Source: Octopus bimaculoides
Lineage: Eukaryota
Direction: 5' to 3'
Assembly (NCBI RefSeq): GCF_001194135.2
Contig: NC_068981.1
Location: 130,255,691 to 130,319,690, forward strand
Length of the DNA: 64,000 nt
The notes below the pieces were generated by a model. The model made no database searches. It was not told where the DNA came from and saw only the letters and a list, made by a program, of their open reading frames with translations. This document shows positions 1 through 61,473 of the stretch, one piece after another (the stretch's first letter is position 1; the number at the start of each line of letters is the position of its first letter). Both the position numbers and the translations under genes were made by a program.

Positions 1-207
1 GTTTAAAAATATAGCTGTATAATATGAACATGTCAATTTGATTCAGATATCCATGTGACAGGCAGGTTTCCACAAAGTTTCCATCTATCAAATTCACTCA
101 TAAGGCATTGGTCAGTCTGAGGCCATAGCAGAAGACACTTGCCCATTGCTGAAACAGTATTTATAGTCATGTTCAAAATATCAGAAAGTATCCAATAGAG
201 ATTCAAG

Positions 208-615
208 GCATAGCTGTGTGGTAAGAAGCGTGCTTCCCAACCACATAGTCCCGAGTTCAGTACCACTGTGTGGCACCTTGGGTAACTGACTTCTACTATA
301 GCCTCAGGCCAACCAAAGCCTTGTGAGTGGATTTGGTAGATGGAAGGTGAAAGAAGCCCGTCATGTGTGCACGCGTGTGTATATATATATATATATGTTT
401 GTGTGTCTATGTTTGTCCCCCCCATTATCACTTGACAACTGGTGTTGGTATGTTTACATCCCCATAACTTAGCAGTTCAGCAAAGAGACGAATAGAAAAA
501 GTACTAGGCTTAAATATAAGTCCTTGGATCGAATTGTTTGACAAAAACACTTCAATATTGTGCTCCAGTATGGCCACATCCAAATGACTGAAACAAGTAA
601 AAGAATAAAAGAATA
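208..615 (+). mobile_element. SINE family 3 (internal (TA)n/(TG)n, AAAAGA tail); further copies ~6100-6485(-), 12740-13025(-), 13305-13685(-), 16600-16975(-), 31140-31495(+), 49068-49312(+), 52615-52970(-), 54925-55280(-), 61230-61805(-), 62028-62415(+)
   Basis: GCTGTGTGGTAAGAAG head, GGTTCAGTCC B-box-like motif, conserved body. Confidence 0.88.
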
Positions 616-3716: not shown

Positions 3717-4700
3717 CTAAAATACAATTCACTTCATTAATATTTATTTTGATAAACACATTTGTGTTTATCGTTTTGATAAACATGATACATTTTTTTA
3801 AAATAAACAAAAAGAAAAAAAAATGACATGAAAAAATATGGAAATTATTATTTTTTTAATGTATATAATGCAGTCTGTCCCATCTTAGCACTGGAGGAAG
3901 AGCTAACTGTAAAGAGTTCATGCAAATTATATTTAGTTTGAACTCTTGCAGATTAGTGATTTGAAGGGAACTCTTAACACAGTTAAGTTCTATTAGTAAT
4001 GAGAGATAGAAAGATTTCATACAGGAAAAGGAAAAAGACAAGTACATAATTGGGTGTGTGTGGGGAGTGAGGATGATCTTACACATGCTCATTTGTTTTC
4101 CTACATGTGTCTTAAAATATCATAGATCTCTTTCTTACTTCCAAACCTAGATGATACTCAAAACATAAGACGCCTAATCACTGAAGTCTTATAACCCTTT
4201 AGCATGCAGATTATTCTGTCAAATGTAATGTTGTTTTGAATAAACCATGCATTATCTTGTAGCATCACAATTTCAATGATGTGAATGATAGAAAGAACCA
4301 TCTAAGATGTGTAGCCTTCCTAGCAAGAGATGATGCTGCATTGGACTGGCAAAAAATAATACAGTTGCAATACACAAGTTTGTGATTGATGACATCTGTA
4401 ACAATGACACACATAGGGAAACAGCTTTGTCGGATAATTCTCAGGTGAGTCAATCTCTGACTTTACTAATATCAATGATAACAGCTTTATTTTTTTTCAA
4501 AGTTTTCAGAGGTAAGAGATTACCAGTTTGTAGAAAAGATAGCTTCCAGTAAATGCAATTTCAACAGAAATCATAATGGTGATCACTAGAGAGAGAAATA
4601 CATTCAAGATAGTACAGATACTTATTGTGTATGATCATCTCCCATAACCTTATTATAATAATGCTTTGCCTGTAACAAAAATAAAGAAATATAATCTTAC

Positions 4701-4873
4701 TTCATAATCTATCTCAAGACAAGCAAATGTTGGATTTTCAAATCCTACATCAACTCCAACCATGTGGTAGACGAGTGTGCTGGATTTGTGGGCTTCAAGA
4801 GGAGAAGAAATTGTTAGTCGAGCTTGAGCATCTCTGTTCAGGATATATACTAACTTCTGTTTCTCCACAGCAC
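4701..4873 (-). CDS. SF3B3: SF3B3 coding exon 4 (173 nt; (G)[29 protein letters not shown]...FACLEIDYE)
   Basis: ORF 4653-4868 matches SF3B3; TACAG acceptor, GTAAGA donor. Confidence 0.97.
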
Positions 4874-9385: not shown

Positions 9386-10497
9386 CTGAAAAGAAACAGA
9401 TTTTGAAATTAGAGAGTGGAAAATTTTAGATAAAGAAAAGGTGTACAAATGGAGTGGAAAATATTAACAGTGAAAAACAATAGTTCTTTCATTTCACACA
9501 CTATCTATGTCCAAATCACAAATCACACACGATATCAAAACATGCTTTCTCTAAGGGTTTGTAAATATACATACGGAAATCCTTACAAAAGTTTATAAAA
9601 AAAGTGAAATAGAAGACTCATTATTCTGTGGAGAAACTAATATTCTTTTACCAGTTTCACCTCTATCAATTATTAAAACTGTTTGTGTTTTATGCACGAG
9701 AGAAAGAGAAAAGGAGGCAGTGACCAACAAGAAAAGGAGGCAGGACCTCTATCAGTCCAAGCTGACTGAATCTACACATATCTGTACAAGCCTGAACTAG
9801 ATTTTTTTGTAAGAAGACTGACACTTGTCCATGCAGATAAGTCTCTCATCTCCATGACACCAATGTTTATCCAAGGGAAAGGCTGCCAACTTTATCCAAT
9901 ACAGCTTGGCATTGCTTCCAGCACACAAAATGTTGGAACAGCTACTACTAAGTAATTTGCTAGATCCTCTAACGCCACCAAATCTTATGCTGGATTGGTA
10001 ATTTTTTAATGACTCAAAAAGGGTGACAAAGATAAGAACTCAGAACACAGACAGTACTGTGAGGCATAATAACAATTCCAATTCACCACTTTCAAGACGA
10101 GGTAATTAACACAAGAGAAGCAAACTCAATTTTTACATCGGGTGATTTACTCTATAGCAAGCATTCAGATCAGGTTTCTATTCTAAGGATAAATTCTTCC
10201 TTAGATGCCCTAAAATGAGGTTATAGATGCTATCCTTCCTCATATGATTAACATTGAGAAAAATACAAAACAAAGCAAATTATTTTGGGGTCATTACCAA
10301 CAAGTGTGTATAGAAATCCTATCACACTTGTCAAAAGGAAAATGAAGTTAGTTAAAGCTATATAAAGGAAAGTAATTGTTCTACCAACAATAAAATGTTA
10401 TAGTTTCAGGTTCTCAACAGTTGCACTTTAATAAAATCATAATTAGAGTTAGCTATTGATAAAAGTCTGAAAAAAAAAAGAAAAAAAATTAACTTAC

Positions 10498-10723
10498 CTT
10501 TAGTTCCACCTGTAAGTCGAAAAGGTAACAAAGCTCTTATCACACCAAATATCTCAACAGTTAAAATAGTGTAGACTTTCCCTGTGTTAGGGTCAGGGCG
10601 CAAAAGCTCTAAGATTTTGCCCCTCGATACAATAACTTCCTGCTGTTTAGTTCCAGAGAAATTACCATGGACAGCTTGAGTTATTCCTGTTGCTCGTTGT
10701 AATGTCAAATTGTACAGAAACAT
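10498..10723 (-). CDS. SF3B3: SF3B3 first coding exon (226 coding nt; MFLYNLTLQRATG...FRLTGGTK); exon begins at acceptor 10731, so an upstream non-coding exon is required
   Basis: N-terminus nearly identical to SF3B3/SAP130/Rse1; TTCAG acceptor 8 nt before the ATG; AAG|GTAAGT donor. Confidence 0.98.
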
Positions 10724-15015: not shown

Positions 15016-15723
15016 ACTGTATGCATTTTACATATCCACATGTGACTGGATTTATCTAATGTAGCTAATAGTTTGATATAACAGCTTGGATATTCTGACG
15101 AATAAAACTTCTGAATGTAAATAATCACATCTCAATTGTGACTGTATTTAGATAAATGCTGTATGACATGACAGGTAGGCAGTGATGAACAAATGACTTC
15201 AGCTGGTTGCAAGAATGAACCAGAAAATATATATAGCCGACCTAAGCATGTTTTTCAGTTTGCTGAGTTGAGACAAGGTTGTGCTGAAGTGGATGATTCA
15301 TCCACTTAATTGGCTTGTAATATTTTGAGAATTATCTTGCAGCTCATACTGGATTCTGTGATTTGATGCTTTGGTAATGAATTTTGGAAATGCAATTTCA
15401 TGAGACTAGATAGGCTGCATTATGTAACTACAATCAGAATTTGCATAGCTGATTGCAACACACAAGCACAATGGCAAGTCTTTAGCTTCTTATGCATAAA
15501 GGAACCTATCTTTTGTGATAAGGGTTTACTTTACAGAAAATGTCAGAAGCAATTCACATAGTGTAATGTGGCTTTATCTGAAATAGTGTTAAGTCATGAC
15601 GGTAAGTGTCTGATAAATGTTACTATAGAAATGAGTTTAGTTACCTTTAAATGTGGAATGAATTCCAAACCTTAATATGAGTGTTTGTAGTAGTTAATAG
15701 AGCTGCAATACACAAACTAAAAA

Positions 15724-16332
15724 CATTATTTACATTTGACAGATATTTGTCATCATGTTTGTTGTTAACACAACGTTTCGGCTGATGTACTCTCCAGCCT
15801 TCATCAGGTATCCTGGGGGAATTTCAAGCCTGGGTTCTCATTCCTAAAGTATTTTCCCAATGTTCTTATTATTATTCAGGTCACTGCTTGGAATCGAACT
15901 TAGAATCTTGGGGTTAGTAGTCCGCGCTCTTAACCACTATGCCATATGGAGTGAATTTTAGGGCTTATAAATCTAATATTTTCCTATCCTTCCTTAATAC
16001 CGGTTCCCATATGCTACTCATATCTGCACTAGGTCTGCTTAAGAGGTTATTATGTCCTAGCATATGTGCTGCCTCTTTTAGTTTTTGTATTTTCCAGTGG
16101 TGTTCTCTGTCTATTATTTTAACTTCATCCCACCTGAATAATAATAATAATAAGAATAACATTGGGAAAATACCTTAGGAATGAGAACCTAGGTTCGAAT
16201 GTCCCCCAGGACACCTGATGAAGGCTGGAGAATACATCAACCGAAACGTGTTAACAACAAACAAGATGAGGACAAATATCCATCGAATGTAAATAATGTA
16301 CATAATTCCTCATCTCTCAAATATAGAATTGT
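15724..16332. mobile_element. Palindromic (head-to-head) tRNA-head + hammerhead element, copy A
   Basis: Inverted arms ~15724-15948 and ~16131-16300 plus unpaired tail; TSD ACAAACTAAAAA at 15712-15723 and 16333-16344. Confidence 0.85.
15767..15812 (-). ncRNA. Minimal type I hammerhead (palindromic ACGT stem III), intact core
   Basis: GATAC-CTGATGA-A-GGCTGG(AGAGTACA)TCAGCC-GAAACGT-T-GTGTT. Confidence 0.7.
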
Positions 16333-19300
16333 ACAAACTAAAAATATTGGTAGAATTGATTTACTATGACATTTGCTGCAGAGATGATAATCAGTTATTC
16401 TGGTGTCCAACCGAGGAAACCAAGAAGTAAACAGACAATTCAAAATGTCTTTGATTAATTATTATTGCTCTGAGTGTACCAAACATTAACACTCGGTTTT
16501 AAACATAAACAATGATGAGTGCTCTACAGTGATGCTGGGCAAAGATGAGTGAAACCAGTAAAAGAACAATATAATTAATAATATTATCCTTTTTCTTTTA
16601 CTTGTTTCAGTCATTGGACTGTGGCCATGCTGGGCACCGCCTTGAAGAATCTTAAATTGAATGAATCAACTGTAGAACTCTTTTTTTAAACCTGGTACTT
16701 ATTCTATTAATCTCTCTTGCCAAACTGTTAAGTTACAGGGAGGTAAACAGGCCAACACCGGTTGTCAAGAGGTGACGAGGGAGAGGCAAACAGACACAAT
16801 GACACACACACATATACAACAGGCTTCTTTCAGTTTCCATCAACCAAATCCACTCACAAGGCTTTGGTTGGCCCAAGGCTATAGTAGAAAACACTTGCCC
16901 AAGGTGCCACACAATGGAACTGAATCTGGAACTACGTGGTTGGGAAGCAATCTTCTTACCACACAACCACATTCTTAATATATATATTCTGACAGATCTG
17001 AGTGTGAATACGTGATTGCTGTTCTTTATCAAAAAACACACCTTCCTTTAGATAATGTGTGTTTATAACATTCATATAACAATATAACGAGTGCAAGGAC
17101 ACTGAGACACTGTGATGTTTTGCCCTTGTGTGTCTCCTCAGACAAAGCTGCCCTGCTATTGTTTGAATTCTTGCTGTTCTGAGTGCACCCCATAAATGAT
17201 TATCTGTTTGGCAGACAAGAGCACATATCAGTAAATAATTTGTTTGCTGAGTTTTATAAACAAAAGCTTGTGCTCTTGTTAGATTCATCAATCTGGCAAG
17301 ATAGATTTGACTGAGGAGACACACAATAAGGTCAAAACACCAGTATCTTTAAGTCCCCTTAACCCATTAGCCTTTAAACTGGCCACATCCATCCCAAATA
17401 TTCTACCTGTTATATGTTCAAACTAGCCAGATCTAGCTTCTCACACATATCCTGCAATGTCATTCTAAGAATAAGCAATCACATCATCAAATGTCAATGC
17501 TACAAGATGATGCAGAACTAATTGAAAATGGTGTGAATAGATAAGCATTACATTTGACACAGTAATCCGGATGATAAAGGGTTGAACCAATGAATTGCTT
17601 GTGTTACGAATATGCACCGTCTGAAGGGAGGTGCTTCCTGATCACAAACAACAACAGCAATCAAGTATTTACATTTGAATCTGCCAGAACATATTAAGAA
17701 TGAAAAGATACATTACTCTTTGGATTCTCTCTGTTCTGCATGCATCCCAGGAATCATTAACAAAGCGAAGATATGGCTGTGTGGTTTAAGAAGCTTGTTT
17801 GCCAACTGTGTGGTCTTAGGTGAGTCCCACTGCATGGCACCTAGGGCAAGAGTCTTCCACTATAGCTTCAAATTGACCAAAGCCTTGTAAGTGGATATGA
17901 TAGTTAGAAACTGACAGAAGTTCATCATGTGTATATGTGTGTGTATATATGTGCATGTATGTGTGTTTCTGTGGTTGGGTACCCTTGTCCAGATATATGA
18001 TGGTTGTAAACTAGTGTCATTATCATACAAACAAGGTTGTTCATTTCCAGTCTTCTGTGAAAAGCATGTCTAGCTATGGATATAGATGAAGGTTGGCAAC
18101 AGGAAGGGCATCCAACCAAAGAAAATCTGCTCCAACAAATTCCATTTGACTCTTGTAAACGGGACGTTATGACCCAAAGAGAATGGCAAATGACAATTTA
18201 GGCATATCAGCAGGTAATTTTTTCCCTTTTTTCCCCTACGTCAGAGCAGGAAAGGCAATCTTTTTCAGGTCTTCTGTGACTGGTGGATGGAAAGAATGTT
18301 ATCTTCAGATAGGAGACCTTGCTCAAATGTTTGTAATAAAGTGGACTCGACTTAAGGCACTCAGTGGCTAAGTGAATGGTGTGTTTTACCACTCAAAAAC
18401 AGAAACGGTATCGACAGGTATTATAATTTCCATCTACCAAATTTCATTCACAAGACCAAGGCTTTATTTGACACCAGACTATATTAACTAATCAACACAT
18501 ACACAAGTAGATACAGAAATATAATGCAATGCAACAATAAATGAAAACAGTCAGTAACAATGGCAAAAGAAACCCAAAAAACACGGATGATGGTAAATCA
18601 TCGCCATTTTACGTTTGTTTTACGTACCGGTACGAACCGGACAGTTCGGAGGGCCACGTTACGCTCGTGCGTTTCATTTTGGGCTGGTTTCTACGGTTGA
18701 ACGCCCTGCCTAAAACCAACCACTCTGCAACGTTTGCTGGGTGCATTTCATTGTCACCCAAAGGATCCTTTCGGCCCTACGTTGTCTCCGCTAGTTCGCA
18801 AATCACAACATCGGCAGAATGTATTAAACGTTAAGTTCCCAATATCTCAATCACAAATCGGTGCACATTGGGATTAGACACTGAGGGAAAATGGCTGTAA
18901 CTTTTTTTATTACCCACACATCTATTATAGGAAAACAAAAGAATCCCATAGACACAACCTGAATATTTTGAACATATTTTCTAGCTAGACCAGAAAATGC
19001 AGCAATTCAATCAACATATTCCCGTGCTTTCAGAATGGACAAGGGCACTATTCATCTGAGTATTGCAGTGCGAAGTGGAATCGTTGAATCAAGTTATGCA
19101 ACTTCGAATTGCGAAGTGGTGCAATCGATGATGATGAATTATTTTCCCTCGGGGTATAGCTAATTTTGTAAGGAAAACTTTTAATCGATCCAATCGTCTT
19201 CTATATAAAATATGAAATTTAGCCGAATGCCCTTTTGTTGTTACTAATTTTAACGACGAATTAAGCACATCATGATAAACAATAGAATGCGGTTCGTATT

Positions 19301-20300: not shown

Positions 20301-22911
20301 TAATCATGTATGATCAATGTAATCAGCCAATTGTTATGAATGCATCATTCCTTTTGAATGCATTTGGATTTCCATGCAAATCCTTATTAAACTAATTTAA
20401 GTCGTCGATTTCAATTCAGAAATAACCAGGAACTAATATAAAGTACAACTCCAAATAAAATTCAATTATAAACTGAAAACTGGAGCTAGTTGTTTAGCTT
20501 CCAGTTAGCTTTCTTTGAATAGACCTATATTCTAAGTCGCTCCAGTCATGTCCCGCCTGTCTTTTCAGATGTAGCTAGCAAAACTTTATTCAGTCTCTTT
20601 CCCTTTTCATAATGTGATGAGGGAGATTTGGCTGCTCTTTCTAACAGATCGAGTGACTTTATAGAGGCTGCGTAAAAAGTTTAAATTTTGATGAAACACA
20701 AAACATGGCACTGATATTAGGACATTAATTAAATATTACCCAAAGAAATTATATTGGTTTCAAATTTTGGCACAATCCCAGCAATTTCGGGGGAGGAGGT
20801 AAATCGATTACATTGACCGCCGTGCTCAACTAGTACTTATTTTATCGATCCCGAAGGCTTGAAAGGCAAAGTCGACCTCAGCGGAATTTGAACTCAGAAA
20901 GTAAAGTCGGACGAAATACCGCAAAGCACTTTGCCCAACGTGCTTACGATCCTGTCTGCTTGCCGCTTTAATCGTAAGAAATTATATTGGCTTCAAATTT
21001 CGATACAAAGCCAGCACTTTGCTCAGCGTGTTTACGATCCTGTCTGCTTGCCGCTTTAATCGTAAGGAATTATTTTATATTGGCTTCAAATTTCGATACA
21101 AAGCCAGCAGTTTCGTGGAAGGGGTATAGTTGCTTACATCGACCTCAGTGTTTCATTGCTACTTATTTTATCGACCCAAAATAACATGAAAGACAAAGTT
21201 GGCCTCGGCGGAATTCGAACTCGGAACGTAAAGTTGGACGAAATGCCGGCGTGCTATCGATTCTGCCAGCTCGTTGCTTTGTCCCAAGAAATTGTTTTAA
21301 AAAACAAAAGCAAATTAATGCAGTCCTCAATGTTATTACAAGAGAATATTGCTAGGAATGAGTAAGTTAAATGTTTATTTACACTAGTGTCCAAAGAAGT
21401 ATTTTGAGTAAAAGGTTTTCTTTGTGACATTGAGTTCTTGCTAGCTCTTTGAAATATCTCATGCTATCTTCTATAGTATTGTGTGACACAATTCTTGGAA
21501 GTGTTATAAGGCAGGACTCAGAGAACAATGTATAGAACCAAAATGTAAACAGTGCATTTATTCACTTGTATAATATATGTCATTTACTCCCTATTCTTCT
21601 GAAGGCTTGATTATGGAAATATTTGAGAATGTTTGACAAAGTTTCCTCAACTTTGAACTTGAATGTCATATAAGATGTCTCATAGAATAATTGAACCCTT
21701 TTGCTACCATATTTCTCTTGGAATGCACCACCTTTGTTTCAATTAATTTTGAAAATAATGAAGAATTTAATAAAATACATTTGTCATTATTAAACTGATT
21801 TTTGGAACATGAATTAACATGAAATGTTATGAGAAATTTTAATTTAAATCATTTTTAAACAGGAAGTTGCTATCAAGCAGGTGATTTGCTATGGGAAGAC
21901 TTAAGGTAGTGAGTGATATGTTGCTGGTTGTTTATTAAGCTCTGGCCTTAATATGCCTGACACTTGCCCAAGGTGCCACACAGTGTGACTAAACTTGCAA
22001 ACATACTTAGGGAAGCAAACGTCTTAACCACACAGCCTTAAATATCATCATCATCATCATCATTTAACTTCTGCTTTATATGCTGGCATGAGTTAGACGG
22101 TTTGAATGAAACTGGTAAGCTATGGGGCTACACTAGGTTTCAATCTAATTTGGCATGGTTTCTATGGCTGGATGCCCTTCCTAACGCCAACCACTCCAAG
22201 AATGTAACAAGTGCATTTTACATGACACCGGCATCGGCCATGACTACAATTTCACTTGGCTTGACGGGTCTTCTCAAGCGCAGCATATTGCCAAAGGTTT
22301 GGTCACTTATTGCCTCCATGAGGCCCAATGTTTGAAGGGTGCTTAAAACATCCCAGTTACATGACACTGGCATCAGCCATGATTATAATTTCACTTGGGT
22401 TGATGGGTCTTCTCAAGCATGGCATATCGCCAAAGGTCTCAGTAACTTGTCATCGCCTTCATGTGTTTGTGTGGTCTCGGTAACATGTCATCGCCTTCTT
22501 GTGTTCAAATGAAGATCATGCGTCACCACTTTGTCCCATGACTTCCTGAGTCTACACCTTCCACAGGTTCCCTCCATGGTTAGAGATCAGTACTTATGTG
22601 AGTGTGTGTAAACTAATACATCTGTTTGTTGTTTACACACTCATCTTCGTCTTTTGTTTTTTTTTTGTAAATTCTCACTATATATATTGCCATCTAAGAA
22701 TACACAAGTCAGGAAAAAATGCAAATGTATATACATATACAGTCGGAGGCAAGGATGTTTAGTAAGAAGTTTGCTTCCCAACCATATAGTTCCAGGTCCA
22801 GTTCCATTAGGTGGCACCTTGGACTTCTGCCATAGCCTTAGGCCAACTAAGGCCTTGTAAGTGTATTTGGTTGATGGAAATATACATCATATGTATGTGT
22901 GTGTGTGTATA

Positions 22912-23372
22912 NNNNNNNNNNNNNNNNNNNNNNNNNNNNNNNNNNNNNNNNNNNNNNNNNNNNNNNNNNNNNNNNNNNNNNNNNNNNNNNNNNNNNNNNN
23001 NNNNNNNNNNNNNNNNNNNNNNNNNNNNNNNNNNNNNNNNNNNNNNNNNNNNNNNNNNNNNNNNNNNNNNNNNNNNNNNNNNNNNNNNNNNNNNNNNNNN
23101 NNNNNNNNNNNNNNNNNNNNNNNNNNNNNNNNNNNNNNNNNNNNNNNNNNNNNNNNNNNNNNNNNNNNNNNNNNNNNNNNNNNNNNNNNNNNNNNNNNNN
23201 NNNNNNNNNNNNNNNNNNNNNNNNNNNNNNNNNNNNNNNNNNNNNNNNNNNNNNNNNNNNNNNNNNNNNNNNNNNNNNNNNNNNNNNNNNNNNNNNNNNN
23301 NNNNNNNNNNNNNNNNNNNNNNNNNNNNNNNNNNNNNNNNNNNNNNNNNNNNNNNNNNNNNNNNNNNNNNNN
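22912..23372. other. Assembly gap; other N-runs at 1784-1793, 8120-8257, 25169-25968, 44532-44541, 49313-49524, 51564-51573, 61512-61611
   Basis: N characters, mostly adjacent to young repeats or microsatellites. Confidence 0.99.
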
Positions 23373-24317
23373 AGCCAGGCCCTGGAAGACCTGTAGAGCT
23401 CAACAAGAATGTCCTGCAAATCCTGGTGGAACAAAATCCCATCGTAACTGTTGAGGAACTTGCAAAGAAGCTTGGATTTGGTCATTCAACCATTCATCAA
23501 CACCTGTGCGCCATCAGAAAAGTCAGCAAATTGGGTCAATGGGTTCTTCACAAACTTTCTGAGTCTAATCACGTGCAGAGAGTAAATGTGTGCTCTTCTT
23601 TGCTGTCACATCTCACAAATGAACCTTTTTGGGACCGAATAGTGACTGGTGATGAGAAATGGGTTCTCTATAAAAACGTCAAGTGCCCAAGACAGTGGGT
23701 AGGTAAAGGAGAAATACCAGCACCCCAGACCAAAGAAGGTCTTCATCCATGTAAGGTGTTGTTATCTGTTTTGTGGGATATAAAAGGTTTAGTCCACTTT
23801 GAACTTTTAAATCCAAACCAAACGATAACAAAGAAGATCTACTGTGAGCAGCTTAAGTCAGCGCTAAAAGAAAAACGATCATCTTTTGTTTCAAGACAAA
23901 AGGTGTTCTTTCATCAGGATAATGTTCAGCCACATACAGCGAGGATGACATTCCAGAGGCTGGAGTAGTTTGTATGGGAAATGATATTCCACCCATCATA
24001 TTCGGTGGACATTGCTCCATCATTTATCCTTTATCATTATCATTTATCACTATCATTTATTCCACAGTCTTGAAAATCATTTGGATGAAATAAATATGAA
24101 TTGTGTAGATGAGGTCAAAACAGTACTGGAAGAGTATTTTTTGTCAAGGATAAGTGAATTTTGGAAGAGGGGCCTTGCAAGTCTACCAGATATATGGAAG
24201 AGCAGTGTAGAAAATGAAGGAGAGTATATTTTAGATTAAAAAAGAACTTTGTTTATCTTAATTTTGAAAAATAAAAGAAGTATAACAAAACAGCATTATT
24301 TATGGGATGACCCAATA
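23373..24317 (+). mobile_element. Degenerate mariner (Tc1/mariner) transposon; 5' part in assembly gap
   Basis: HTH, WVxH, TGDEKW, HQDN and YSxDIAP motifs with stop/frameshift; 3' TIR ...TTATGGGATGACCCAA followed by TA. Confidence 0.93.
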
Positions 24318-31907: not shown

Positions 31908-33505
31908 CATCATCATCATCATTTAGCATCCTTTGTCCATGTTGGTATGGGTTGGACGGTTTAACAGGGCTGGAAGGCTGTACCAGACTCCAGTCTGATT
32001 TGGCATGGTTTCTACGGTTGGATACCCTTCCTAACACCAACCACTCCGAGAGTGTAATGGCATGGGTGTCATTTGCATGACACTGGTATCTGCCATGGCT
32101 GTGATTTTACTTGGCTTGATGGGTCTTCTTCTCAAGCACGACATGATGCCAAAGGTCTTGGTCATTGCCTCCATGAGGACCAACACTTGAAAGGAGCTCA
32201 GCCACTTTACATCCATGAGGTCCAACATTCGTGCCAGTTATGTGACACCAGTATCAACCATGACAATGATTTCACTTGGCTTGACGGGTCTTCTCAAGCA
32301 CAGCATATCAGCAAAGGTCTCGGTCACTAGTCATTGCTTCTGTGAGGCCCAAAGTTCAAAGATCCTGCTTCACCACCTTGTCCCATGTCTTCCTGGATCT
32401 ACCTCTACCACAGGTTCCCTCCACAGTTAGAGATCAGCACTTCTTTACACAGCTGTCCTCGTCCATCCACATCACATGACCATACCATTGCATTCGTCTC
32501 TCTTACACACTATCTGATGCCTCTTATGCCCAATTTTTCTCTCAAGATGCTTACACTTTGTCGAACATGTACACTGACATTGCACGTCCAGCGAAGCATA
32601 CTGGCTTCATTTCTTTCAAGCCTACGCATGTCCTCGGCTGTTACAGCCCAAGTTTCACTGCTGTGCATACAGCATAGCTGTTTACATACAGGTATCATAC
32701 AATCTGCCTTTCACTCTGAGAGAGGGGCCCTTTGTTGCCAGCGGAAGTAGGAGCTCTCTGAACTTAGCCCAGCCTAATCTTATTCTCACAGCTATGCTCA
32801 TGGAACATCCACCTCTGCTACAAACTTAGTCATCTAGATGATGGAAGCTATCTACTACCTCTAGCTTACTCCACTGGACTCTATTTTCTGTACATTTTCA
32901 GTGTTTATTGTACCTGTGCATCTTTCACACACAAAAGCTATCTTCCCTGTTAACCTTGATATTGCTACACCTCTTATGTGTCCAAAGCTTAGACCAGGTG
33001 CATCTTATGGAGTTTCTACCTATGCCTTTTCTACAGATCGAGCAGGGCCATTGACCTGAAGGGATTTGTGATTTGTCTGCCTTTCTACTTAGGAAGACTT
33101 TGGTTTGTGCTAGGTTAACTCTAAGGCCCTTTGATTCTAGACCTTGTTTCCATACCTGGAACTTCTTCTCCAGTTCTGGTAGTGGTTCAGCTATAAGAAC
33201 AAACACATCAGCATAGAGGAGCTCCCAGGAGCAGCCTGTCTTATATTCCACTGTTATTGCCTGGACAACTATAATGTACAAGAAGGGGCTGAGTACCAAT
33301 CCTTGGTGAACCCCTACTTGTACCCTGAATTCTTTACTGTACTTGTTGCCAACCCTCACCTTACTGGTAGTGTCCCTATACATGGCTTGTACAGCTCTCC
33401 AACCACTTGTCTATCCCTAGTTTCCGCATTGACCACTAGATAAGGGATTAGAGGACCCTGTCAAAAGCTTTCTCCAAGTCAGCAAAAGACAAGTACAGAA
33501 GTTTA
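31908..33505 (-). pseudogene. 5'-truncated RTE-clade LINE (RT core to 3' UTR and (GAT)n tail), disrupted
   Basis: DLEKAFD, GVHQGxVLSP, LLYAD, SETW, WYGHV and GRxRKTW motifs with stops; Cys-rich WPCSIC...WTHKRC insert. Confidence 0.9.
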
Positions 33506-36791: not shown

Positions 36792-37810
36792 CTAGCAGAG
36801 GCACCCGGCATTGCCCGGGAATTAAATTTTTCCTTACATATTGGAAGAAAAAAGCAAAATATGTTGTATAGAAATTTGTTATTCTAAATTCAAATTATTC
36901 TTTAATTGGGAAATCAATTCTGAATTCATAATACAAAATAATAGTAATAAACGAAAATACAAAATTTTCCACTTTTATGAAAGGAGATAAATTCTACTAC
37001 ATATGTTGAAGGAAATTATGTAAGAGCTTCTGGGTAAACAACATTCTTTGTTTACTGGTTTGGAGCATAGACAAATAAGTCTTGTAAACTACTACTTATC
37101 CTGGAACAACCAACATAAAGTCGACAATGAAAAACGCAAGCAAGTAGATTTCAAAGGCTGACCTTGAGCTTTATTAATAGACATTGCAAAGCAAAGTTGC
37201 ACTGGGAATTGTGTTTGTTTAAACTCAAATGGCATATCTGTTGGTTTGATTGGAATTCTTGGAATGAAAACCTCTTCTCCAGAGACACATCCAGTGATGA
37301 TGGTAGCTTCTGTCACATTAGGTGATTATGTCTTCACAATCAACCTTGTTCTATTGCATAATTTAGGAGGATCTAAATTTCTTAGAAGCATTATTGAGAC
37401 TCCAACTTTCAGAAAAAGTTTATGTGGTGGAATTCCAGGTGGCTCAAGAGAATTAAGGAACTCTATTGGGTAATGGACAGCTTGATTTTCATTAAGGACT
37501 GAATCAACTGATTTGTACTTCTTAATGACTGTTGGAATCTTATTTATTAATTCATAGGTAATCCTTGCTACTGTCTCATTTTTTGGAGTAAGAACTGCCC
37601 TTTTACACAACCATTTATGTGGATTATAATTATTACATAAGTCTGGCAATACCCTGTTCTTCAATTCAGCTGGGGAATTCATCATGATAGCAATATGAGC
37701 CAAACTGATATCACCATTCCCATCAAATGGTACTTCTCTATTTCCTAGTTTATAACAAATTAAAAACAGAACACAAAGGATATCTCGGTACACGTGTTTC
37801 AAGCTTTATA
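36792..37810 (-). mobile_element. Helitron 3' fragment (PIF1 helicase C-terminus, frameshifted) with intact 3' end
   Basis: EFLNSLEPPGIPPH, MLLRNL, IPRIP, FAMSINKAQGQ motifs; hairpin CCCGG-6nt-CCGGG (36804-36819) then CTAG|T. Confidence 0.93.
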
Positions 37811-46462: not shown

Positions 46463-48151
46463 GTTAATTCAGTTTAAATCAATCAATGTGTTGCATCTAA
46501 ATGACTGTTATTTTATTATAGGTACAGATGTGTCTGTGTGGTTAAGAAGCTTGCTTCTCAGCCACAAGGGCTTGGGTTTGGTCTCACTGTGCAACATCTT
46601 GTGCAAATATTTTCTACTGCTGCTCCAGGCTGGCCAAGGCCTTGTGAGTGGATTTGATTGATGGAAACTGAAAAGAGCCTGTCATATATCCATCAAATAT
46701 GTGTATGTATGTATATATATGTATATATTTATATATATATACACACATATACACACATATATATGTGATGGATATATGATGACAGGCTCTTTAAATATAT
46801 TGTGAAGGTACATGGCTCAGTGGTTAGAACTTCAGGCTCACAGTCATGAGGTAGTTTGTTCGATTCCTGGACTGGGTTGTGTGTTGTGTTCCTGTGCGAG
46901 ATACTTTATTTCATGTTGCTCCAGTTCACTCAGCTGTAGAAATGAGTTGTGATGTCACTGGTGCCAAGCTGTATTGGACTTTACCTTTTCCTTGGATAAC
47001 ATCAGTGGTATGGAGAGGGAAGGCTGGTATGCATAGGCAACTGCTGGTCTTCCATAAATGACCTTGCCCAGACTTGTACAATCCCATGGCCATTCATGAC
47101 CAAAGGGGTTCTTTACCCTTTATTTATATATAATTCATTTTCACTTTATCAGCAGATACTTGCTGAAATATTATATAATCACAACATTGACAAGGCCATC
47201 AATTGCTGTTATACACTGCTGGTCACAATGCACTTCTAGTTCTTTCTTGATTGATCGATTCTTTTCCACCTTGACCCATATTGCTTGACTAAATTGGCCT
47301 TCTCATCATCATGGAGATTATAGAGGCCTTTTCTGATCTCTTGAATGCAACATAGCAACTGCATGGGTTCACCTGTTGTCTGAACCCTTTGACATGTCTG
47401 ACCCAGCAGAATTTATGCTTTTGGTACTCTGTGCTCACAGTGTTTACTCCACTCCATTCTTGAATTATCTCATTTCGAATGTGCTCTGACAGCTTTGAAA
47501 TCACGTGACCTAGCACTTCTGGCACCAATGTCAGATAGTTCTTATCTGCTAACAGTATATCTGTACTCTTAGCACTGTATGTCTATATGAGAAGATCTCT
47601 CAAGGCAAACTCTGCTGTAAAAGCTAATATTAATATTTCTGATAATACATTCACGTTAAGTTGCTCTGCAATCATTTCATCATCTGACATGTGGCACGTT
47701 GTGCACCTGCACAGGTAATGTCGATTTGATGGAGGGAGTGAGCTTATGTGAACACAGACATTTGATCACTATAAACAAACCGTCTGTGTGTTTGTTCGGC
47801 AAGAAATTGCAGAATCCTTATACGTCATCTAACAACAGGAGACTCTATGATATACATTTATATGTGTATGTGTGATTACGGGGGTGAATACAAAATTTGC
47901 ATACCAAACAAAATATACTTTGTAGTATTTAGTTTGGATCAAATTATTTTTCTTAATGTCAAGAGCGTCTTGCTTTTTGTTTCTTATGAGATTCATAAAG
48001 TCAGTACTACAAACAAGTATGAATATGAATAGCTAAGACTCCAGAAAGTTGGTGCTCCAGCACACTTAAAAGAAGATAAAAATTTAATTTAACGAAAGCA
48101 GTGATAAGTATTTTATTTTATTTTTTAACTTCTGTCTTATTTCTTCTTCAG

Positions 48152-57753: not shown

Positions 57754-58008
57754 GTAAATATTCTTTATGGAATTATATATTAATGTCATTTCATTCCATT
57801 TTTTCCTAAGGAAAGGATTTTTACACCTGTTTTGCTAAAAAATTTTTTATTTATTACTAGCAGAGATACCTGGCATTACTCTGGATTAAAATGGCATAGT
57901 TTTTATATATATTACAGTTATGTTGAAATGGGTGATATGGGAAAGTGCAGCATTGATGACAAAGCATTTGTGGAGTAAATGACAGGCTAATTCGGCTAAG
58001 CGACATGT

Positions 58009-58581
58009 ACATTATTTACATTTGACGGATATTTGTGCTCATCTTGTTTGTTGCTAACACGTTTCAGCTGATATACCCTCCAGCCTTCATCAAGTGTCTT
58101 GTGAAAATTTCGAACTTGGGTTCTCATTCCTAAGGTATTTTTCGATGTTATTATTATTCAGGTCACAGCCTGGAATCGAACTCGGAATCTTGGGGTTAGT
58201 AGCTCGCACTCTTAACCACTACGCCATATGCTAGTGGGCATATTACGTAGTGGTTAAGGCTACTATGCCATATGCTAGTGGGCATATTACGTAGTGGTTA
58301 AGGCTACTATGCCATATGCCAGTGGGCATATGATGTAGTGGTTAAGGCTACTAACCCCAAGATTCCGAGTTCGATTCCAGGCAGTGACCTGAATAATAAT
58401 AATAACATTGAAAAATACCTTAGGAATGAGAACCCAGGTTTGAAATTTCCCCAAGATACCTGATGAAGGCTGGAAGGTATATCAGCCGAAACGTTGTGTT
58501 AGTAACAAACAAGATGAGGACAAATATCAGTCAAATGTAAACAATGTACATAATTCATCATCTCTTAAATATAGAACTGTA
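58009..58581. mobile_element. Palindromic (head-to-head) tRNA-head + hammerhead element, copy B
   Basis: Inverted arms ~58006-58230 and ~58325-58550; central 44-bp tandem units; TSD TAAGCGACATGT at 57997-58008 and 58582-58593. Confidence 0.9.
58455..58500 (+). ncRNA. Minimal type I hammerhead (palindromic ACGT stem III), intact core
   Basis: GATAC-CTGATGA-A-GGCTGG(AAGGTATA)TCAGCC-GAAACGT-T-GTGTT. Confidence 0.7.
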
Positions 58582-59562
58582 TAAGCGACATGTCATGTGT
58601 CTGTTTGGAGTATTCCAGGCCCTAACCTGTCATGGAAAATTGGGAGTGGAGTGTATGTGATTTTTGAACACATCGCAAATCTGTCAGTGGATGTACTCTC
58701 CTTTGCGGTGGTCGGTGCTGTGTCTTACACAACACATCATCTGAAGTTTTGACACCTCCTTTGGGTATGATGTCCTACATCACTCATAACATAAATTTGG
58801 AGGAACTATGGTTTCTTTATGGGTAACAAGGAAGCAATGAGGTGATAGACTTGCCCTTGAACTTTGAATGTCAGTGCAAATCCATGTTCAACTATCTCCT
58901 TAGATGCACCAAATAATGTCATTTGAAATGCAGACTTGTATTGTCTGATATCATTCAGAAAATTCTTTGACTGGATGGAAGTGCCTTCCAGAAGATCCAT
59001 AAAAGGTTGAGGAGGAGCTGGGAGTGCTGGCAAGCTTACTTACCACCTGAGCAGCACATGCCATTAGTTTCATTTGGAAATTTTAAAGCTTTACAGAAAC
59101 AACAATTTGAGTTTAGCACACCTCTTTCTTATAAAAATTACCATTTTTATAAGAAAGAGATGGATCATATCTGAAAGCAGCTCCAGGAGTTGTGAAGAAC
59201 GAATTTGTACGTAGTCTGTTTCTGAGAGCTATTCTATTGGACCTCTGTCTAATCATTAAAACATTGTTGTAATGATTCAGCATTAAGTGCTGCAGCATGC
59301 CTTTGCTGATTTTGGAAAAGTCACATTTCTCTTCTCTTTTGAGACTCCATTTGACATTCTGCAGCATTCATTTGCTGATCTGAAAAAAGTCGCATCTTCC
59401 TTCTGTATTGAGACTCTCACTTTCGGTTTTCCACAATCCTACTTGTTTCTGGAAAAATTATGTTGTTTGTTTGGCAGCATATTTTTTTCAATATTGTAAA
59501 CAAAAAATTATGAACATTAATCTCTATTCTTGCATACTGAAATTATTGTTTTAACTTTACAG

Positions 59563-59700: not shown

Positions 59701-60200
59701 TATCAGGTCATCCCATAAGTTCTGTCTGAATTTTGAATAAAGAAAACAAGTGATCAAATGTTATATTTAATTGAAATTTAATCATCAATGTACTTTCCCT
59801 GGTTATCTATGTCTTCCTTCCATCTATTTACAAGCTTTTTAATCCCATTAATATAAAACTCTTTTTGCTTTCAAAGTGAAGAACTCTGAAATGTCAGTTT
59901 CGACCTCCTCCAAATGATTCTGTGAAAGATGAAACAAATGGTAGTCTGAAGTAGCAAGGTCGGGAGAATAAGGTGGATGAGGAATTTTTTCCCAACCAAG
60001 CTCTTCGATCTTCTGTGATGTGGGGTCGCATGTTGTCCTGATGAAACATCACTCCTTTTTGATTCACTAAAGCGGGTCTTTTTTTCTTCAAAGTTTGGTT
60101 CAAATGCTCTAATTGCTGACAGTAGACTTGAGCATTGATTGTTGCATTAGGTGGTAACAATTCAAAGTGAATTACTCCTTTGCAATCCCACATATGCTGG
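59701..60200 (-). mobile_element. Mariner transposon 3' fragment
   Basis: WDCKGVIHFELL, FHQDN and HPPYSPDLATSDYHLF motifs; TIR TATCAGGTCATCCCATAA resembles the 24.3 kb TIR. Confidence 0.9.
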
Positions 60201-61473
60201 TAAAGTGACGCTGGCAACGATCATGCTCGAAAAGTGCTTTTCATATGTCACTGGCACTGGAGCCAATCCGCGGCCCTGGCAACTATCATGCTCGGATGTG
60301 CTTTTAACATTCCACTGGCACGAGTGCCAATCAGGCAGTACTACAAACACATGTATATAAATGATTCTTTGTACTATCTTACAAGTGTGATAGCCTAGTT
60401 AATTTATAACAAGCTTTTTTATATAGTGTATTAATCCATGTATAATTGGTACTGATGTATAATTTGCTGATCTAATTTGAGCCAATGAAATCCTCAAAAA
60501 ATGTCTTGTGTATAATGTGCGCTGATTTGTTTTTAGTACATCTTCATTTTTACCTTGCATTTCGCATTGAAGCAAAATGAATGGAAAATGATATGTAATT
60601 ATATAATATATATATATAATGCAAGAGAGTTAGGGGTTGAGGATTCAACCCACTAAGGGATAGTATCTATCCAATATACTGCTGGGAGGGTACTCAGTTA
60701 TTGTTACACTAGTGTTATACCAAGTGGGAGCGGGTAAAAGGTTTTTTTTTTACCCTAAATTTATATATCAATTAGAAAGTGCTGAAAAGTTCCTGGTTTT
60801 GGATAAAAGAAAATACAGGAGGATCAGTTAATTATGATTTTATACAACATATTCTCCTCTCAGATTTACACACTTATTGCAGTGGTCCTCAAGCAACTGA
60901 AACGAGTAAAAGATTCCATTTTATTAACCATTATTACTGATTAGAAAAAAACATCTTTTATTTCAGTTTCATTTTATTGTCGATTGTTACCAATTACCAA
61001 CTCTTTCATTTTCTCTGTTTACTGAAAACCATTTTATTTTCTGGTTGAATTAGTGATGAAGCCAGTGAAAGTGCACAAGATTAAAAATAAAAAGCAGCGG
61101 AATTTACCACCCAGCTTCAAATTTTAATTCTCAGTTTTATTCCAGTCATGTTACTAATGTTTCTCAGAAAAGCTTTATCTTCATCACGTTTTTCTCATTT
61201 TTCTAAATATTTGAAGATTTTCGCATTTATCATTTTTATTTTGTACTTGATTCAGTCATTATTAGACTACAGCTATGCTGGGGTTCCACCTTTAGGAATT
61301 TTAGTTGATCTAATTGATCCCAGTATTTATTTTCTTTTTAAGTTTGGTACTTATTGTATCAGTGATTTTTGTTGAACCATTAAGTTACAGACACATAAAC
61401 ATACCTACACCAGTTGTCAAGCAGTGATGGGGTACAAACACAGTCACAAAGACACACACACATACACACACAA

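What the first reader, a model, noticed from the sequence alone, without database searches (positions are those of the whole stretch)
57997..58593. Palindromic mobile element: two divergent tRNA-like Pol III heads, each arm with a hammerhead, inserted as one unit with a 12-bp TSD (copy B, COG4 intron 14)
Seen: two ~220-bp arms in head-to-head orientation. Each has a tRNA-like head (TAGTGGTTAAG A box, GTTCGATTCC B box; the right head lacks 7 nt), an (AAT)n linker and a minimal type I HHR (GAYAC-CTGATGA-A-6-bp stem II-GAAACGT-T-GTGTT). Only the right arm carries the tail TAATTC..CATCTCTTAAATATAGAACTGTA. TAAGCGACATGT flanks the whole palindrome, and the centre holds a 44-bp unit (58223-58266, 58267-58310, then partial). 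Established: minimal HHRs with a palindromic stem III occur in Penelope-like element (PLE) repeats and cleave as dimers. Inference: a non-autonomous SINE/PLE chimera whose mobile unit is the inverted dimer. It could give divergent self-cleaving transcripts and a long dsRNA hairpin in host pre-mRNA, a likely ADAR substrate if the host is a cephalopod. I do not recognise this architecture as described. Caveats: one extra A between A9 and stem II, and a GUU cleavage triplet.
Basis: partly seen in the sequence, partly recalled or inferred. Interest (0 to 1): 0.9.

Follow-up and report, generated by a model that had tools for sequence, protein, structure and literature searches.

The report
Penelope-type inverted insertion of a ribozyme-bearing SINE
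This is a short non-coding jumping element, probably in an octopus genome, with a tRNA-like promoter and a small hammerhead ribozyme; its mirror-image double structure is most likely the known scar of insertion by a Penelope-like retrotransposon enzyme rather than a new palindromic mobile unit.

Summary
The sequence features are real. Two ~225-270 bp arms lie head-to-head at 58009-58581. An exact 12-bp target duplication flanks them, a 34-nt tail sits on the right end only, and a 44-bp x3 palindromic junction fills the centre. A second copy at 15712-16344 has the same outer architecture.

Only one arm per copy keeps an intact minimal hammerhead (B right, A left). No tRNA model recognises the heads; they show only tRNA-spaced A/B boxes.

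Published work on Penelope-like elements (PLEs) accounts for every odd feature. It describes head-to-head inverted copies with palindromic junctions, an optional 30-40 bp tail on one outer end, TSDs around the whole insert, and min-HHRs with a bulged nucleotide. A PLE protein was shown in vitro to cut and extend both DNA strands from two adjacent internal RT start sites.

Related copies from other assemblies include one more inverted dimer and three monomers, so the dimer is not the obligate mobile unit. The family occurs in Octopus bimaculoides.

Best reading: a tRNA-headed, HHR-bearing SINE or retrozyme-like element mobilised by a PLE, with the palindrome made at insertion. I found no autonomous partner, and cleavage, Pol III transcription and RNA editing are untested. 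The new element is a Pol III-type head joined to a PLE-type 3' module.

The parts
57997..58008 (.). Left target-site duplication, copy B (TAAGCGACATGT). Its last 4 nt (ATGT) are also complementary to the first 4 nt of the tail (ACAT), giving microhomology at the left junction.
58009..58235 (-). Left arm of copy B, a full-length monomer without tail. The complete A/B-box head lies at ~58164-58235, the (AAT)n linker at ~58148-58163, and a decayed hammerhead at ~58058-58098 (TTGATGA, 3-nt deletion). The outer end falls at the proximal 3' terminus ...AATAATGT.
58218..58353 (.). Head-to-head junction. It is a 44-bp unit x3.1, and each unit is itself a mini-palindrome made of the two 5' head ends around a 6-nt spacer (TAGTGG).
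58311..58581 (+). Right arm of copy B. Its head lacks 7 nt between the A and B boxes. It then has (AAT)n, the body, an intact min-HHR, an AC-rich stretch and the tail.
58455..58500 (+). Intact minimal type I hammerhead. Helix I is 58455-59 / 58496-500. CUGAUGA is at 58460-66, with a bulged A at 58467. Stem II is 58468-73 / 58482-87. GAAA is at 58488-91, and the palindromic A-CG-U is at 58491-94. U17 is at 58495, and the predicted cut lies between 58495 and 58496.
58548..58581 (+). 34-nt tail ACATAATTCATCATCTCTTAAATATAGAACTGTA, present on one outer end only. I interpret it as the stretch between the two PLE RT start sites.
   Evidence: PMC11167929
58582..58593 (.). Right target-site duplication, copy B.
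15712..15723 (.). Left TSD of copy A, ACAAACTAAAAA (11-12 bp; the first A is ambiguous).
15724..15948 (-). Left arm of copy A, with a complete head, no tail, and an intact min-HHR. CUGAUGA is at 15807-15801, and the predicted cut lies between 15772 and 15771 on the minus strand.
15949..16145 (.). Centre of copy A. This is ~197 bp of sequence unique in the window, in place of a recognisable right head. It holds two 10-11 nt matches to the element's 5' terminus in opposite orientations (~16008 and ~16057).
16146..16333 (+). Right arm of copy A. It runs from (AAT)n through the body, a decayed HHR (3-nt deletion, stem II C.A mismatch) and the 34-nt tail at 16300-16333.
16334..16344 (.). Right TSD of copy A.

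Best explanation
The repeat unit is a ~265-nt non-autonomous retroelement. It has a tRNA-like A/B-box head (a probable Pol III promoter), an (AAT)n linker, and a ~150-nt 3' module. That module holds a Penelope-type minimal hammerhead, an AC-rich stretch, and two alternative 3' termini 34 nt apart. I infer that a Penelope-like element's RT/GIY-YIG protein copies it into the genome.

The palindrome is not the transposing unit; it is made at insertion. The proposed steps are:
1. The PLE protein cuts both target strands with a ~12-bp stagger.
2. It primes reverse transcription from both 3' ends.
3. On one strand it starts at the distal RT site, which leaves the tail. On the other it starts at the proximal site, which leaves no tail. 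In copy B a 4-nt microhomology helps this second start.
4. Both cDNAs run to the 5' end of the short RNA.
5. The two heads are joined in the middle with a variable, palindrome-prone junction.

Shown here: the anatomy, its recurrence in three independent dimers, the existence of monomers, the 3' ends at two positions (proximal or distal), and the intact min-HHR in the family consensus.

Inferred: the PLE partner, Pol III transcription, ribozyme activity, and the twin-priming order of events.
For: 1. Both window copies have one TSD around the whole inverted pair, and the same asymmetric ends. The right end carries a 34-nt tail, and the left arm ends exactly at the tail's first base.
2. PLE literature describes this structure. 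PMC3846280 reports an inverted pLTR completing the insert, an 8-10 bp TSD around it, a 31-bp tail on one of the inverted pLTRs, palindromes at head-to-head junctions, and trans-mobilisation through terminal repeats. PMC8557442 reports a 30-40 bp tail, often at only one end.
3. PMC11167929 shows that a purified PLE protein cleaves and extends both strands. [quoted passage not shown]
4. The HHR has the PLE min-HHR hallmarks: a 5-bp helix I, an extra nucleotide between A9 and G10.1, a G10.1-C11.1 pair, and palindromic 15.2-16.2. Dual motifs 100-700 bp apart on opposite strands are also reported. My descriptor finds 2 hits in the window against 0 of 200 random sequences. The 12-sequence family consensus keeps an intact core.
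5. 3' ends fall at two positions across independent copies. B_R, A_R, L016 and L017 have the tail. B_L, A_L, L006_L, L011, L014 and L019 end at or within ~7 nt of the proximal site.
6. Dimers (A, B, L006) and monomers (L016, L017, L019) coexist.
7. The centres differ between copies. Six sites support within-copy grouping of arms and none supports left-versus-right lineages.
8. Three arms share the same 5' end a few nt upstream of the A box, as expected for run-off on a short Pol III transcript.
9. Octopus genomes hold active PLEs and abundant unclassified SINEs (PMC13282606). The family occurs in O. bimaculoides.
Against: - No autonomous PLE sharing the 3' module was found. The profile search of 1.84 billion proteins returned only short ORFs and no RT-length protein. 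The window holds no PLE ORF.
- The head is not recognised as tRNA by Rfam or by ARAGORN at default settings, so Pol III transcription rests on A/B-box motifs and spacing alone.
- The covariation test of the HHR helices is inconclusive, and the monomer fold is not better than shuffles (z = -1.3).
- The 12-bp TSD is a little longer than the 8-10 bp reported for rotifer PLEs.
- Only 6 copies with both flanks visible were available, and no clear TSDs were seen on the monomers.
Confidence: 0.68

Rival explanations
1. The inverted dimer itself is the master or mobile unit. It is transcribed divergently from two Pol III heads and re-inserted as a palindrome.
For: Two of two window copies and one Logan copy are dimers with the same outer ends, and TSDs surround the whole pair.
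Against: - Monomers with head and tail exist.
- The centres of A and B are unrelated.
- No left-versus-right arm lineages appear.
- A divergent pair of Pol III transcripts cannot yield one RNA that holds both arms.
- The PLE mechanism already explains de novo inverted copies.
Confidence: 0.08
2. An ordinary LINE-dependent tRNA-SINE (partner RTE, CR1, L2 or similar). The inverted pairs would arise by L1-style twin priming, and the hammerhead-like motif would be incidental.
For: - Octopus genomes are rich in SINEs and in RTE/CR1/Dong LINEs.
- An RVT_1 fragment lies in the window.
- No PLE partner was found.
Against: - Classical twin priming inverts a more 5' segment of the same RNA and does not duplicate the same segment.
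- Two fixed 3' termini 34 nt apart, with the tail on one side only, are reported as unique to PLEs.
- The motif carries four PLE-specific min-HHR traits and does not arise by chance.
Confidence: 0.14
3. The arms are simply solo inverted pLTRs of an autonomous PLE left by heavily 5'-truncated insertions. On this view there is no SINE, and the A/B boxes are fortuitous.
For: - Inverted solo pLTR pairs with TSDs are known.
- The reading frame MRTQVRNF...KYRT stays open through the tail in all arms and in many relatives. This resembles pLTRs that contain the first codons of the PLE ORF.
Against: - Three arms stop at the same 5' position just upstream of the A box rather than at random truncation points.
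- Monomers are bounded by unrelated DNA right upstream of the head.
- L019 joins the same 3' module to a different tRNA-like head.
- No long ORF continues from the module in any hit.
Confidence: 0.07
4. A MITE or foldback DNA transposon with long terminal inverted repeats.
For: The structure is palindromic and flanked by a TSD.
Against: - The two termini are not inverted copies of each other. One end carries 34 extra nt in both copies.
- Monomers exist.
- To my knowledge a 12-bp TSD is atypical for known DNA transposon superfamilies.
Confidence: 0.03

Closest known systems
Penelope-like element insertion structures: inverted pLTR pairs with a one-sided tail (Arkhipova et al. 2013, PMC3846280; Craig et al. 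2021, PMC8557442; Frangieh et al. 2024, PMC11167929)
   Same: - Head-to-head inverted copies with palindromic junctions.
- One TSD around the whole insert.
- An optional 30-40 bp tail on one outer end.
- A min-HHR upstream of the RT start sites.
- An AC-rich stretch before the 3' end.
   Different: - No RT/GIY-YIG ORF is present.
- The unit is only ~265 nt and begins with a tRNA-like A/B-box head.
- The TSD is 12 bp, against 8-10 bp in rotifer examples.
Metazoan non-LTR retrozymes, proposed to be non-autonomous PLE derivatives (Cervera & de la Pena 2020, PMC7229834; Li et al. 2026 bioRxiv 10.64898/2026.07.22.740005)
   Same: - Short, non-coding, low-GC elements carrying a type I HHR.
- Thought to use PLE machinery.
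- Distant relatives of this module occur as ~129-nt tandem arrays (group-2 hits).
   Different: - Retrozymes are defined by tandem arrays and circRNA intermediates. The copies here are dispersed monomers or inverted pairs.
- These copies have a Pol III-type head.
- Retrozymes were reported as excluded from introns, whereas copy B is intronic.
Schistosoma SMalpha/Sjalpha SINE-like elements with a hammerhead (Ferbeyre 1998 and Laha 2000, as summarised in PMC6765202)
   Same: A Pol III promoter plus a type I hammerhead in a short dispersed non-autonomous retroposon.
   Different: - SMalpha carries a canonical, active HHR and occurs largely in tandem.
- Here the HHR is the minimal PLE type with a 1-bp / palindromic helix III.
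- The PLE tail and inverted-pair signature is present here.
- No sequence relationship was tested.
Classical tRNA-derived SINEs of octopus (OR1, OR2, OK; tRNA-Core and tRNA-Deu families)
   Same: A tRNA-like head with A/B boxes, a body and a partner-specific 3' end. They are abundant in octopus genomes.
   Different: - Those share 3' tails with LINEs.
- This one has PLE-type termini and an HHR.
- A different, classical SINE head sits at 46813 in this window.

Membership tests
Hammerhead ribozyme, minimal type I (PLE min-HHR) | Conserved core CUGANGA ... GAAA with a U16.1-H17 cleavage site. | tested here: met
   B right arm and A left arm have CUGAUGA, GAAA and U-U17. B left arm (UUGAUGA, 3-nt deletion) and A right arm (3-nt deletion) fail.
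Hammerhead ribozyme, minimal type I (PLE min-HHR) | Extra nucleotide between A9 and G10.1, a G10.1-C11.1 pair, a long stem II, a short helix I (4-5 bp), and palindromic 15.2-16.2 (PMC4209133). | tested here: met
   Bulged A at 58467. G58468-C58487 pair. Stem II of 5-6 bp. Helix I of 5 bp with 2 G.U pairs. Palindromic ACGU at 58491-94.
Hammerhead ribozyme, minimal type I (PLE min-HHR) | Helices supported by covariation across family members. | tested here: inconclusive
   78% of cells are paired, against 17-52% in slid registers, but this does not exceed the shuffles. Most copies are decayed.
Hammerhead ribozyme, minimal type I (PLE min-HHR) | Self-cleavage, as a dimer or with protein help. | not testable with these tools
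   Needs in vitro transcription of monomer and tandem-dimer constructs, with and without PLE protein.
Hammerhead ribozyme (Rfam families) | Match to an Rfam hammerhead covariance model. | tested here: not met
   No hammerhead hit at the gathering score or at E<=10. I would expect this for motifs without a helix III hairpin.
tRNA-derived SINE | 5' head with Pol III A and B boxes at tRNA spacing. | tested here: met
   TGGCGTAGTGG ... GAGTTCGATTCC, with the B box starting 43 nt after the start of the A box, in B_L and A_L. Random expectation is 0.24 per 64 kb. The right head of B has a 7-nt deletion and a degraded A box.
tRNA-derived SINE | Head recognisably homologous to a tRNA (cloverleaf). | tested here: not met
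   ARAGORN finds none at default settings, and only tRNA-??? at -ps80. The Rfam tRNA model gives no hit at E<=10.
tRNA-derived SINE | 3' end shared with an autonomous partner element. | tested here: inconclusive
   No partner sequence was available. The peptide-profile search found only short ORFs.
PLE-mobilised insertion | Optional 30-40 bp tail on one end, corresponding to two RT start sites. | tested here: met
   A 34-nt tail on the right end only in copies A and B. 3' ends fall at the proximal or the distal site across 11 copies.
PLE-mobilised insertion | Adjacent inverted copy, head-to-head, with a TSD around the whole. | tested here: met
   Copies A and B have TSDs of 11-12 bp. L006 is a third dimer, but its TSD is not visible.
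PLE-mobilised insertion | Presence of a PLE RT/GIY-YIG source with a matching cis sequence. | not testable with these tools
   No eukaryotic genome or Repbase/Dfam library was on hand. Active PLEs in O. vulgaris are reported.
Non-LTR retrozyme | Tandem head-to-tail repeats of the HHR-bearing unit. | tested here: not met
   No tandem copies of the unit occur in the window or the loci. Only distant group-2 relatives are tandem.
MITE / TIR DNA transposon | Both termini are inverted copies of each other. | tested here: not met
   The right end carries 34 extra nt in both copies, and the terminal sequences are unrelated.

The most novel reading that the evidence does not exclude
This may be an octopus SINE family or superfamily in which tRNA-type Pol III heads (at least two different heads share the module) were fused to a Penelope-like 3' recognition module. 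That would be a SINE-PLE partnership not described in the literature I could search. PLE-style priming on both strands would give many insertions a built-in perfect hairpin. Such elements could then be a systematic source of the unusually abundant long dsRNA and ADAR hyper-editing reported for octopus.
Probability: 0.3. Interest if true: 0.65.

Novelty: new variant of a known kind. Interest (0 to 1): 0.5.

Why it matters
SINEs are defined by their dependence on LINEs. PLEs have been credited only with trans-mobilising pLTR-flanked cargo and, recently, retrozymes. A Pol III-headed element bearing the PLE-unique tail signature would extend SINE biology to a third retroelement class. It would also offer a compact natural substrate (~150 nt) for studying PLE RNA recognition and internal RT initiation.

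In octopuses, SINEs make up more than 10% of the genome and are mostly unclassified. A family that inserts as ready-made hairpins inside introns could help explain the exceptional dsRNA load and hyper-editing. It would also explain assembly breaks and mis-annotation of these repeats.

Tried and rejected
- Rfam at gathering score and at E<=10 on both copies: no hammerhead or tRNA, only chance miRNA/snoRNA-like hits from the palindrome.
- ARAGORN: nothing at default settings.
- Antisense ORF of the arm against the 5.8-billion-protein index: no hit.
- Exact-pattern scan of JGI metagenome contigs for the body plus HHR: 0 loci.
- COG4 exon search, aimed at finding the host or an orthologous empty site. 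The best hit was 83% identical, on unidentified ENA/TARA invertebrate contigs with no copy of the element.
- Look-up of the O. bimaculoides ORF P0059: not on record.
- The dystrobrevin locus in GCA_001194135.2 was too long to fetch.
- Peptide-profile search for a partner PLE ORF: only short ORFs that translate the HHR itself. The conserved 'PDEGW..QPKRC' peptide is therefore best read as an RNA-level constraint, not as coding.
- TSD search on the monomers L016 and L017: none found.
- Similarity of the copy A centre to the head: not significant beyond two 10-11 nt matches.
- Identification of the organism behind SRR11869384-94 through the literature: failed.
- Rejected models: MITE, nested independent insertions, and the obligate-palindrome unit (see rivals).
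Full report
**1. Observation**

- The repeat finder reports three contiguous inverted-repeat blocks (58005-58203 against 58347-58551) at 91-98% complementarity. It also reports an exact 12-bp direct repeat TAAGCGACATGT at both outer edges.
- TRF finds a 44-bp unit x3.1 at 58218-58353. Each unit is a mini-palindrome of the two 5' head ends around TAGTGG.
- BLAST of the right arm against the window finds only four arms: two here and two at 15723-15948 (minus) and 16146-16333 (plus).
- This second copy (A) is flanked by (A)CAAACTAAAAA on both sides.
- In both copies only the right arm carries the 34-nt tail ACATAATTC..ATATAGAAYTGTA. In both, the left arm stops at the very base that precedes the tail.

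**2. The hammerhead**

Rfam finds no hammerhead at its gathering score or at E<=10. I therefore wrote a descriptor for the minimal type I motif: CUGANGA, an optional bulge, a 5-8 bp stem II closed by G-C, GAAA, a palindromic insert, U-H, and a helix I of at least 4 bp.
- It hits exactly twice in 64 kb, at the B right arm (58460, +) and the A left arm (15807, -). It never hits in 200 composition-matched random sequences.
- The B left arm has UUGAUGA, a G.U closing pair, and lacks 3 nt after ACGU. The A right arm lacks the same 3 nt and has a C.A mismatch in stem II.
- So each copy has one intact and one dead motif.
These are an extra nucleotide between A9 and G10.1, the G10.1-C11.1 pair, a short helix I, and palindromic 15.2-16.2. 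They also report dual motifs 100-700 bp apart on opposite strands (PMC4209133).
- A majority consensus of 12 family members keeps an intact core.
- The formal covariation count is inconclusive.
- The monomer fold is not better than shuffles. That is expected for a motif said to work only as a dimer or with protein help.

**3. The head**

- B_L and A_L carry TGGCGTAGTGG ... GAGTTCGATTCC, with the B box 43 nt after the A box, which is tRNA spacing. A generic A/B-box regex finds them plus one unrelated SINE head at 46813. The random expectation is 0.24 per window.
- No tRNA model recognises a cloverleaf.
- Three arms (B_L, B_R, A_L) and both arms of L006 end at the same place, a few nt upstream of the A box. 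This is what run-off reverse transcription of a short Pol III transcript would give.
- The Pol III claim remains an inference.

**4. Relatives elsewhere**

- One frame (MRTQVRNF..PDEGW..QPKRC..NNKQDEDKYPSNVNNVHNSSSLKYRT) is open through the tail in all arms.
- A profile of it against 1.84 billion representative proteins gave 34 hits, all short ORFs.
- One hit is UniRef A0A0L8FV75 of Octopus bimaculoides. Another forms the N-terminus of an NCBI 'dystrobrevin beta isoform X1' model of O. bimaculoides. So the family lives in octopus, and the window, a gap-rich draft at ~35% GC, is probably octopus.
- The conserved peptide is simply the translation of the HHR core, so I read it as an RNA-level constraint. 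No RT-length protein shares it, so no autonomous partner was found.
- A second group of hits are tandem ~43-aa repeats translating the same core, which look like retrozyme arrays.

DNA for several hits came from Logan contigs of runs SRR11869384-94, whose organism I could not identify.
- L006/L009 is a third head-to-head dimer, with arms at 1-218 (minus) and 227-443 (plus).
- L016, L017 and L019 are monomers with at least 230 bp of unrelated DNA upstream of the head.
- L016 and L017 carry the tail.
- L019 joins the same 3' module to a different tRNA-like head.
- Four other contigs start inside the element and are uninformative.

**5. Mechanism**

The PLE literature explains the anatomy point by point.
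[quoted passage not shown] A 31-bp tail is optionally present on one of the inverted pLTRs, and palindromes mark head-to-head junctions. Terminal repeats suffice for mobilisation in trans (PMC3846280).
- Craig et al. describe the 30-40 bp tail as often present at only one end (PMC8557442).
- Frangieh et al. purified a Poseidon protein. It cleaves and extends both target strands. [quoted passage not shown]

Applied here, both strands of a 12-bp staggered cut primed cDNA synthesis on this short RNA.
- One cDNA started at the distal site, giving the right arm with the tail.
- The other started at the proximal site, giving the left arm.
- In copy B the target's ...ATGT-3' is complementary to the ACAU that begins the tail, a 4-nt microhomology at exactly that start.
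- Both cDNAs ran to the RNA 5' end and were joined.
- The junction is variable: a 6-nt spacer with a 44-bp triplication in B, ~197 bp of filler in A, and 9 nt in L006. This fits de novo formation.

Arm comparison agrees with this.
- B arms are 91-96% identical, against 82-87% between copies.
- Six sites group arms by copy, none groups them by side, and 2-3 homoplasy-prone sites cross-group them.
- Copy A's arms are no closer to each other than to copy B's, and they differ in the 5' region. This fits two separate template RNAs.

**6. What is not supported or not tested**

- Divergent self-cleaving transcripts are unlikely to matter. The two HHRs are on opposite strands, so they cannot dimerise within one transcript, and only one is intact.
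- Cleavage at U17 would separate the head from the RT start sites, so full-length copies must descend from uncleaved RNA.
- In the PLE studied in vitro, HHR activity was protein-assisted and dispensable for insertion.
- The hairpin potential is real (-385 kcal/mol, z = -34).
- Copy B lies downstream of a COG4_m exon on the + strand.
- Porath et al. report exceptional dsRNA potential and hyper-editing in O. bimaculoides, and heavy editing of Penelope in lizard (PMC5625713). Editing of this locus was not tested.

**7. Novelty**

- The inverted-pair, tail, TSD and HHR architecture is already described for PLEs.
- Non-autonomous PLE-dependent HHR elements (retrozymes) and Pol III/HHR SINE-like elements (SMalpha) are also described.
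- In the searchable literature I did not find a dispersed element that joins a tRNA-type Pol III head to a PLE 3' module, nor any HHR-bearing SINE in cephalopods.
- Repbase and Dfam could not be consulted.
- I rate it a new variant of a known kind, of moderate interest.

Noticed in passing
window 46805-47120 (+): A different, classical tRNA-derived SINE. It has an A/B-box head (TGGCTCAGTGGTTAGAAC...GTTCGATTCC) and a ~250-nt body. Translated fragments of what looks like the same abundant family recur in many window ORFs (for example the ...ALPNANHSES... peptides).
   Followed up: partly
P0061 (NCBI dystrobrevin beta isoform X1, O. bimaculoides, GCA_001194135.2): The first ~33 residues of this gene model (…GEGWRVYQPKCCVNNKQDEDKYPSK) translate the HHR/AC-rich module of this element family. 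This points to an exonised copy or an annotation artefact at an alternative first exon.
   Followed up: partly
P0072, P0073, P0076, P0077, P0081, P0082, P0085: ORFs made of tandem ~43-aa repeats (QTPEEGRRTYRPKRCGNNNKDEDNSPK..ASSQKFRQ) that translate the same hammerhead core. They probably come from ~129-nt tandem retrozyme-like arrays in some other organism. Their DNA was not retrieved.
   Followed up: no
P0065: A single 156-aa ORF reads first through an antisense arm (…ILFVVNKTFPLIYLPAFF…) and then a sense arm with the tail (…GWRVYQLK…HNSSSFKYRTE). This implies another inverted pair whose inner ends are truncated just upstream of the HHR.
   Followed up: no
window 10406-10720 (-) and 4653-4868 (-): Exons of an SF3B3-like gene (RSE1/DDB1/CPSF1 beta-propeller, N-terminus MFLYNLTLQRATG...) on the minus strand. 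Copy A (15.7-16.3 kb) therefore sits between divergently oriented SF3B3 and COG4, possibly in their shared upstream region.
   Followed up: partly
window 22811-24239, 59894-60214, 37326-37799, 32925-33380: Other mobile-element debris: mariner-type transposase fragments, a Pif1 2B-domain (Helitron-like) fragment, and an RVT_1 reverse-transcriptase fragment with a C-terminal Cys-rich motif. Several runs of N (assembly gaps) lie next to repeats.
   Followed up: partly
L019 230-345: The same HHR/AC-rich 3' module is joined to a different tRNA-like head (TTAGCAGTGGCTAAAC...GAGTTCAGTCTC). This suggests repeated head swapping on a shared PLE-type module.
   Followed up: partly
L001/L002 (ENA ERZ25073285/ERZ25073280): Megabase-scale contigs in 'metagenome' assemblies carry a compact COG4 orthologue (78% identity in the exon) next to MFS transporter genes. 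This is an unidentified invertebrate genome inside metagenome data.
   Followed up: no
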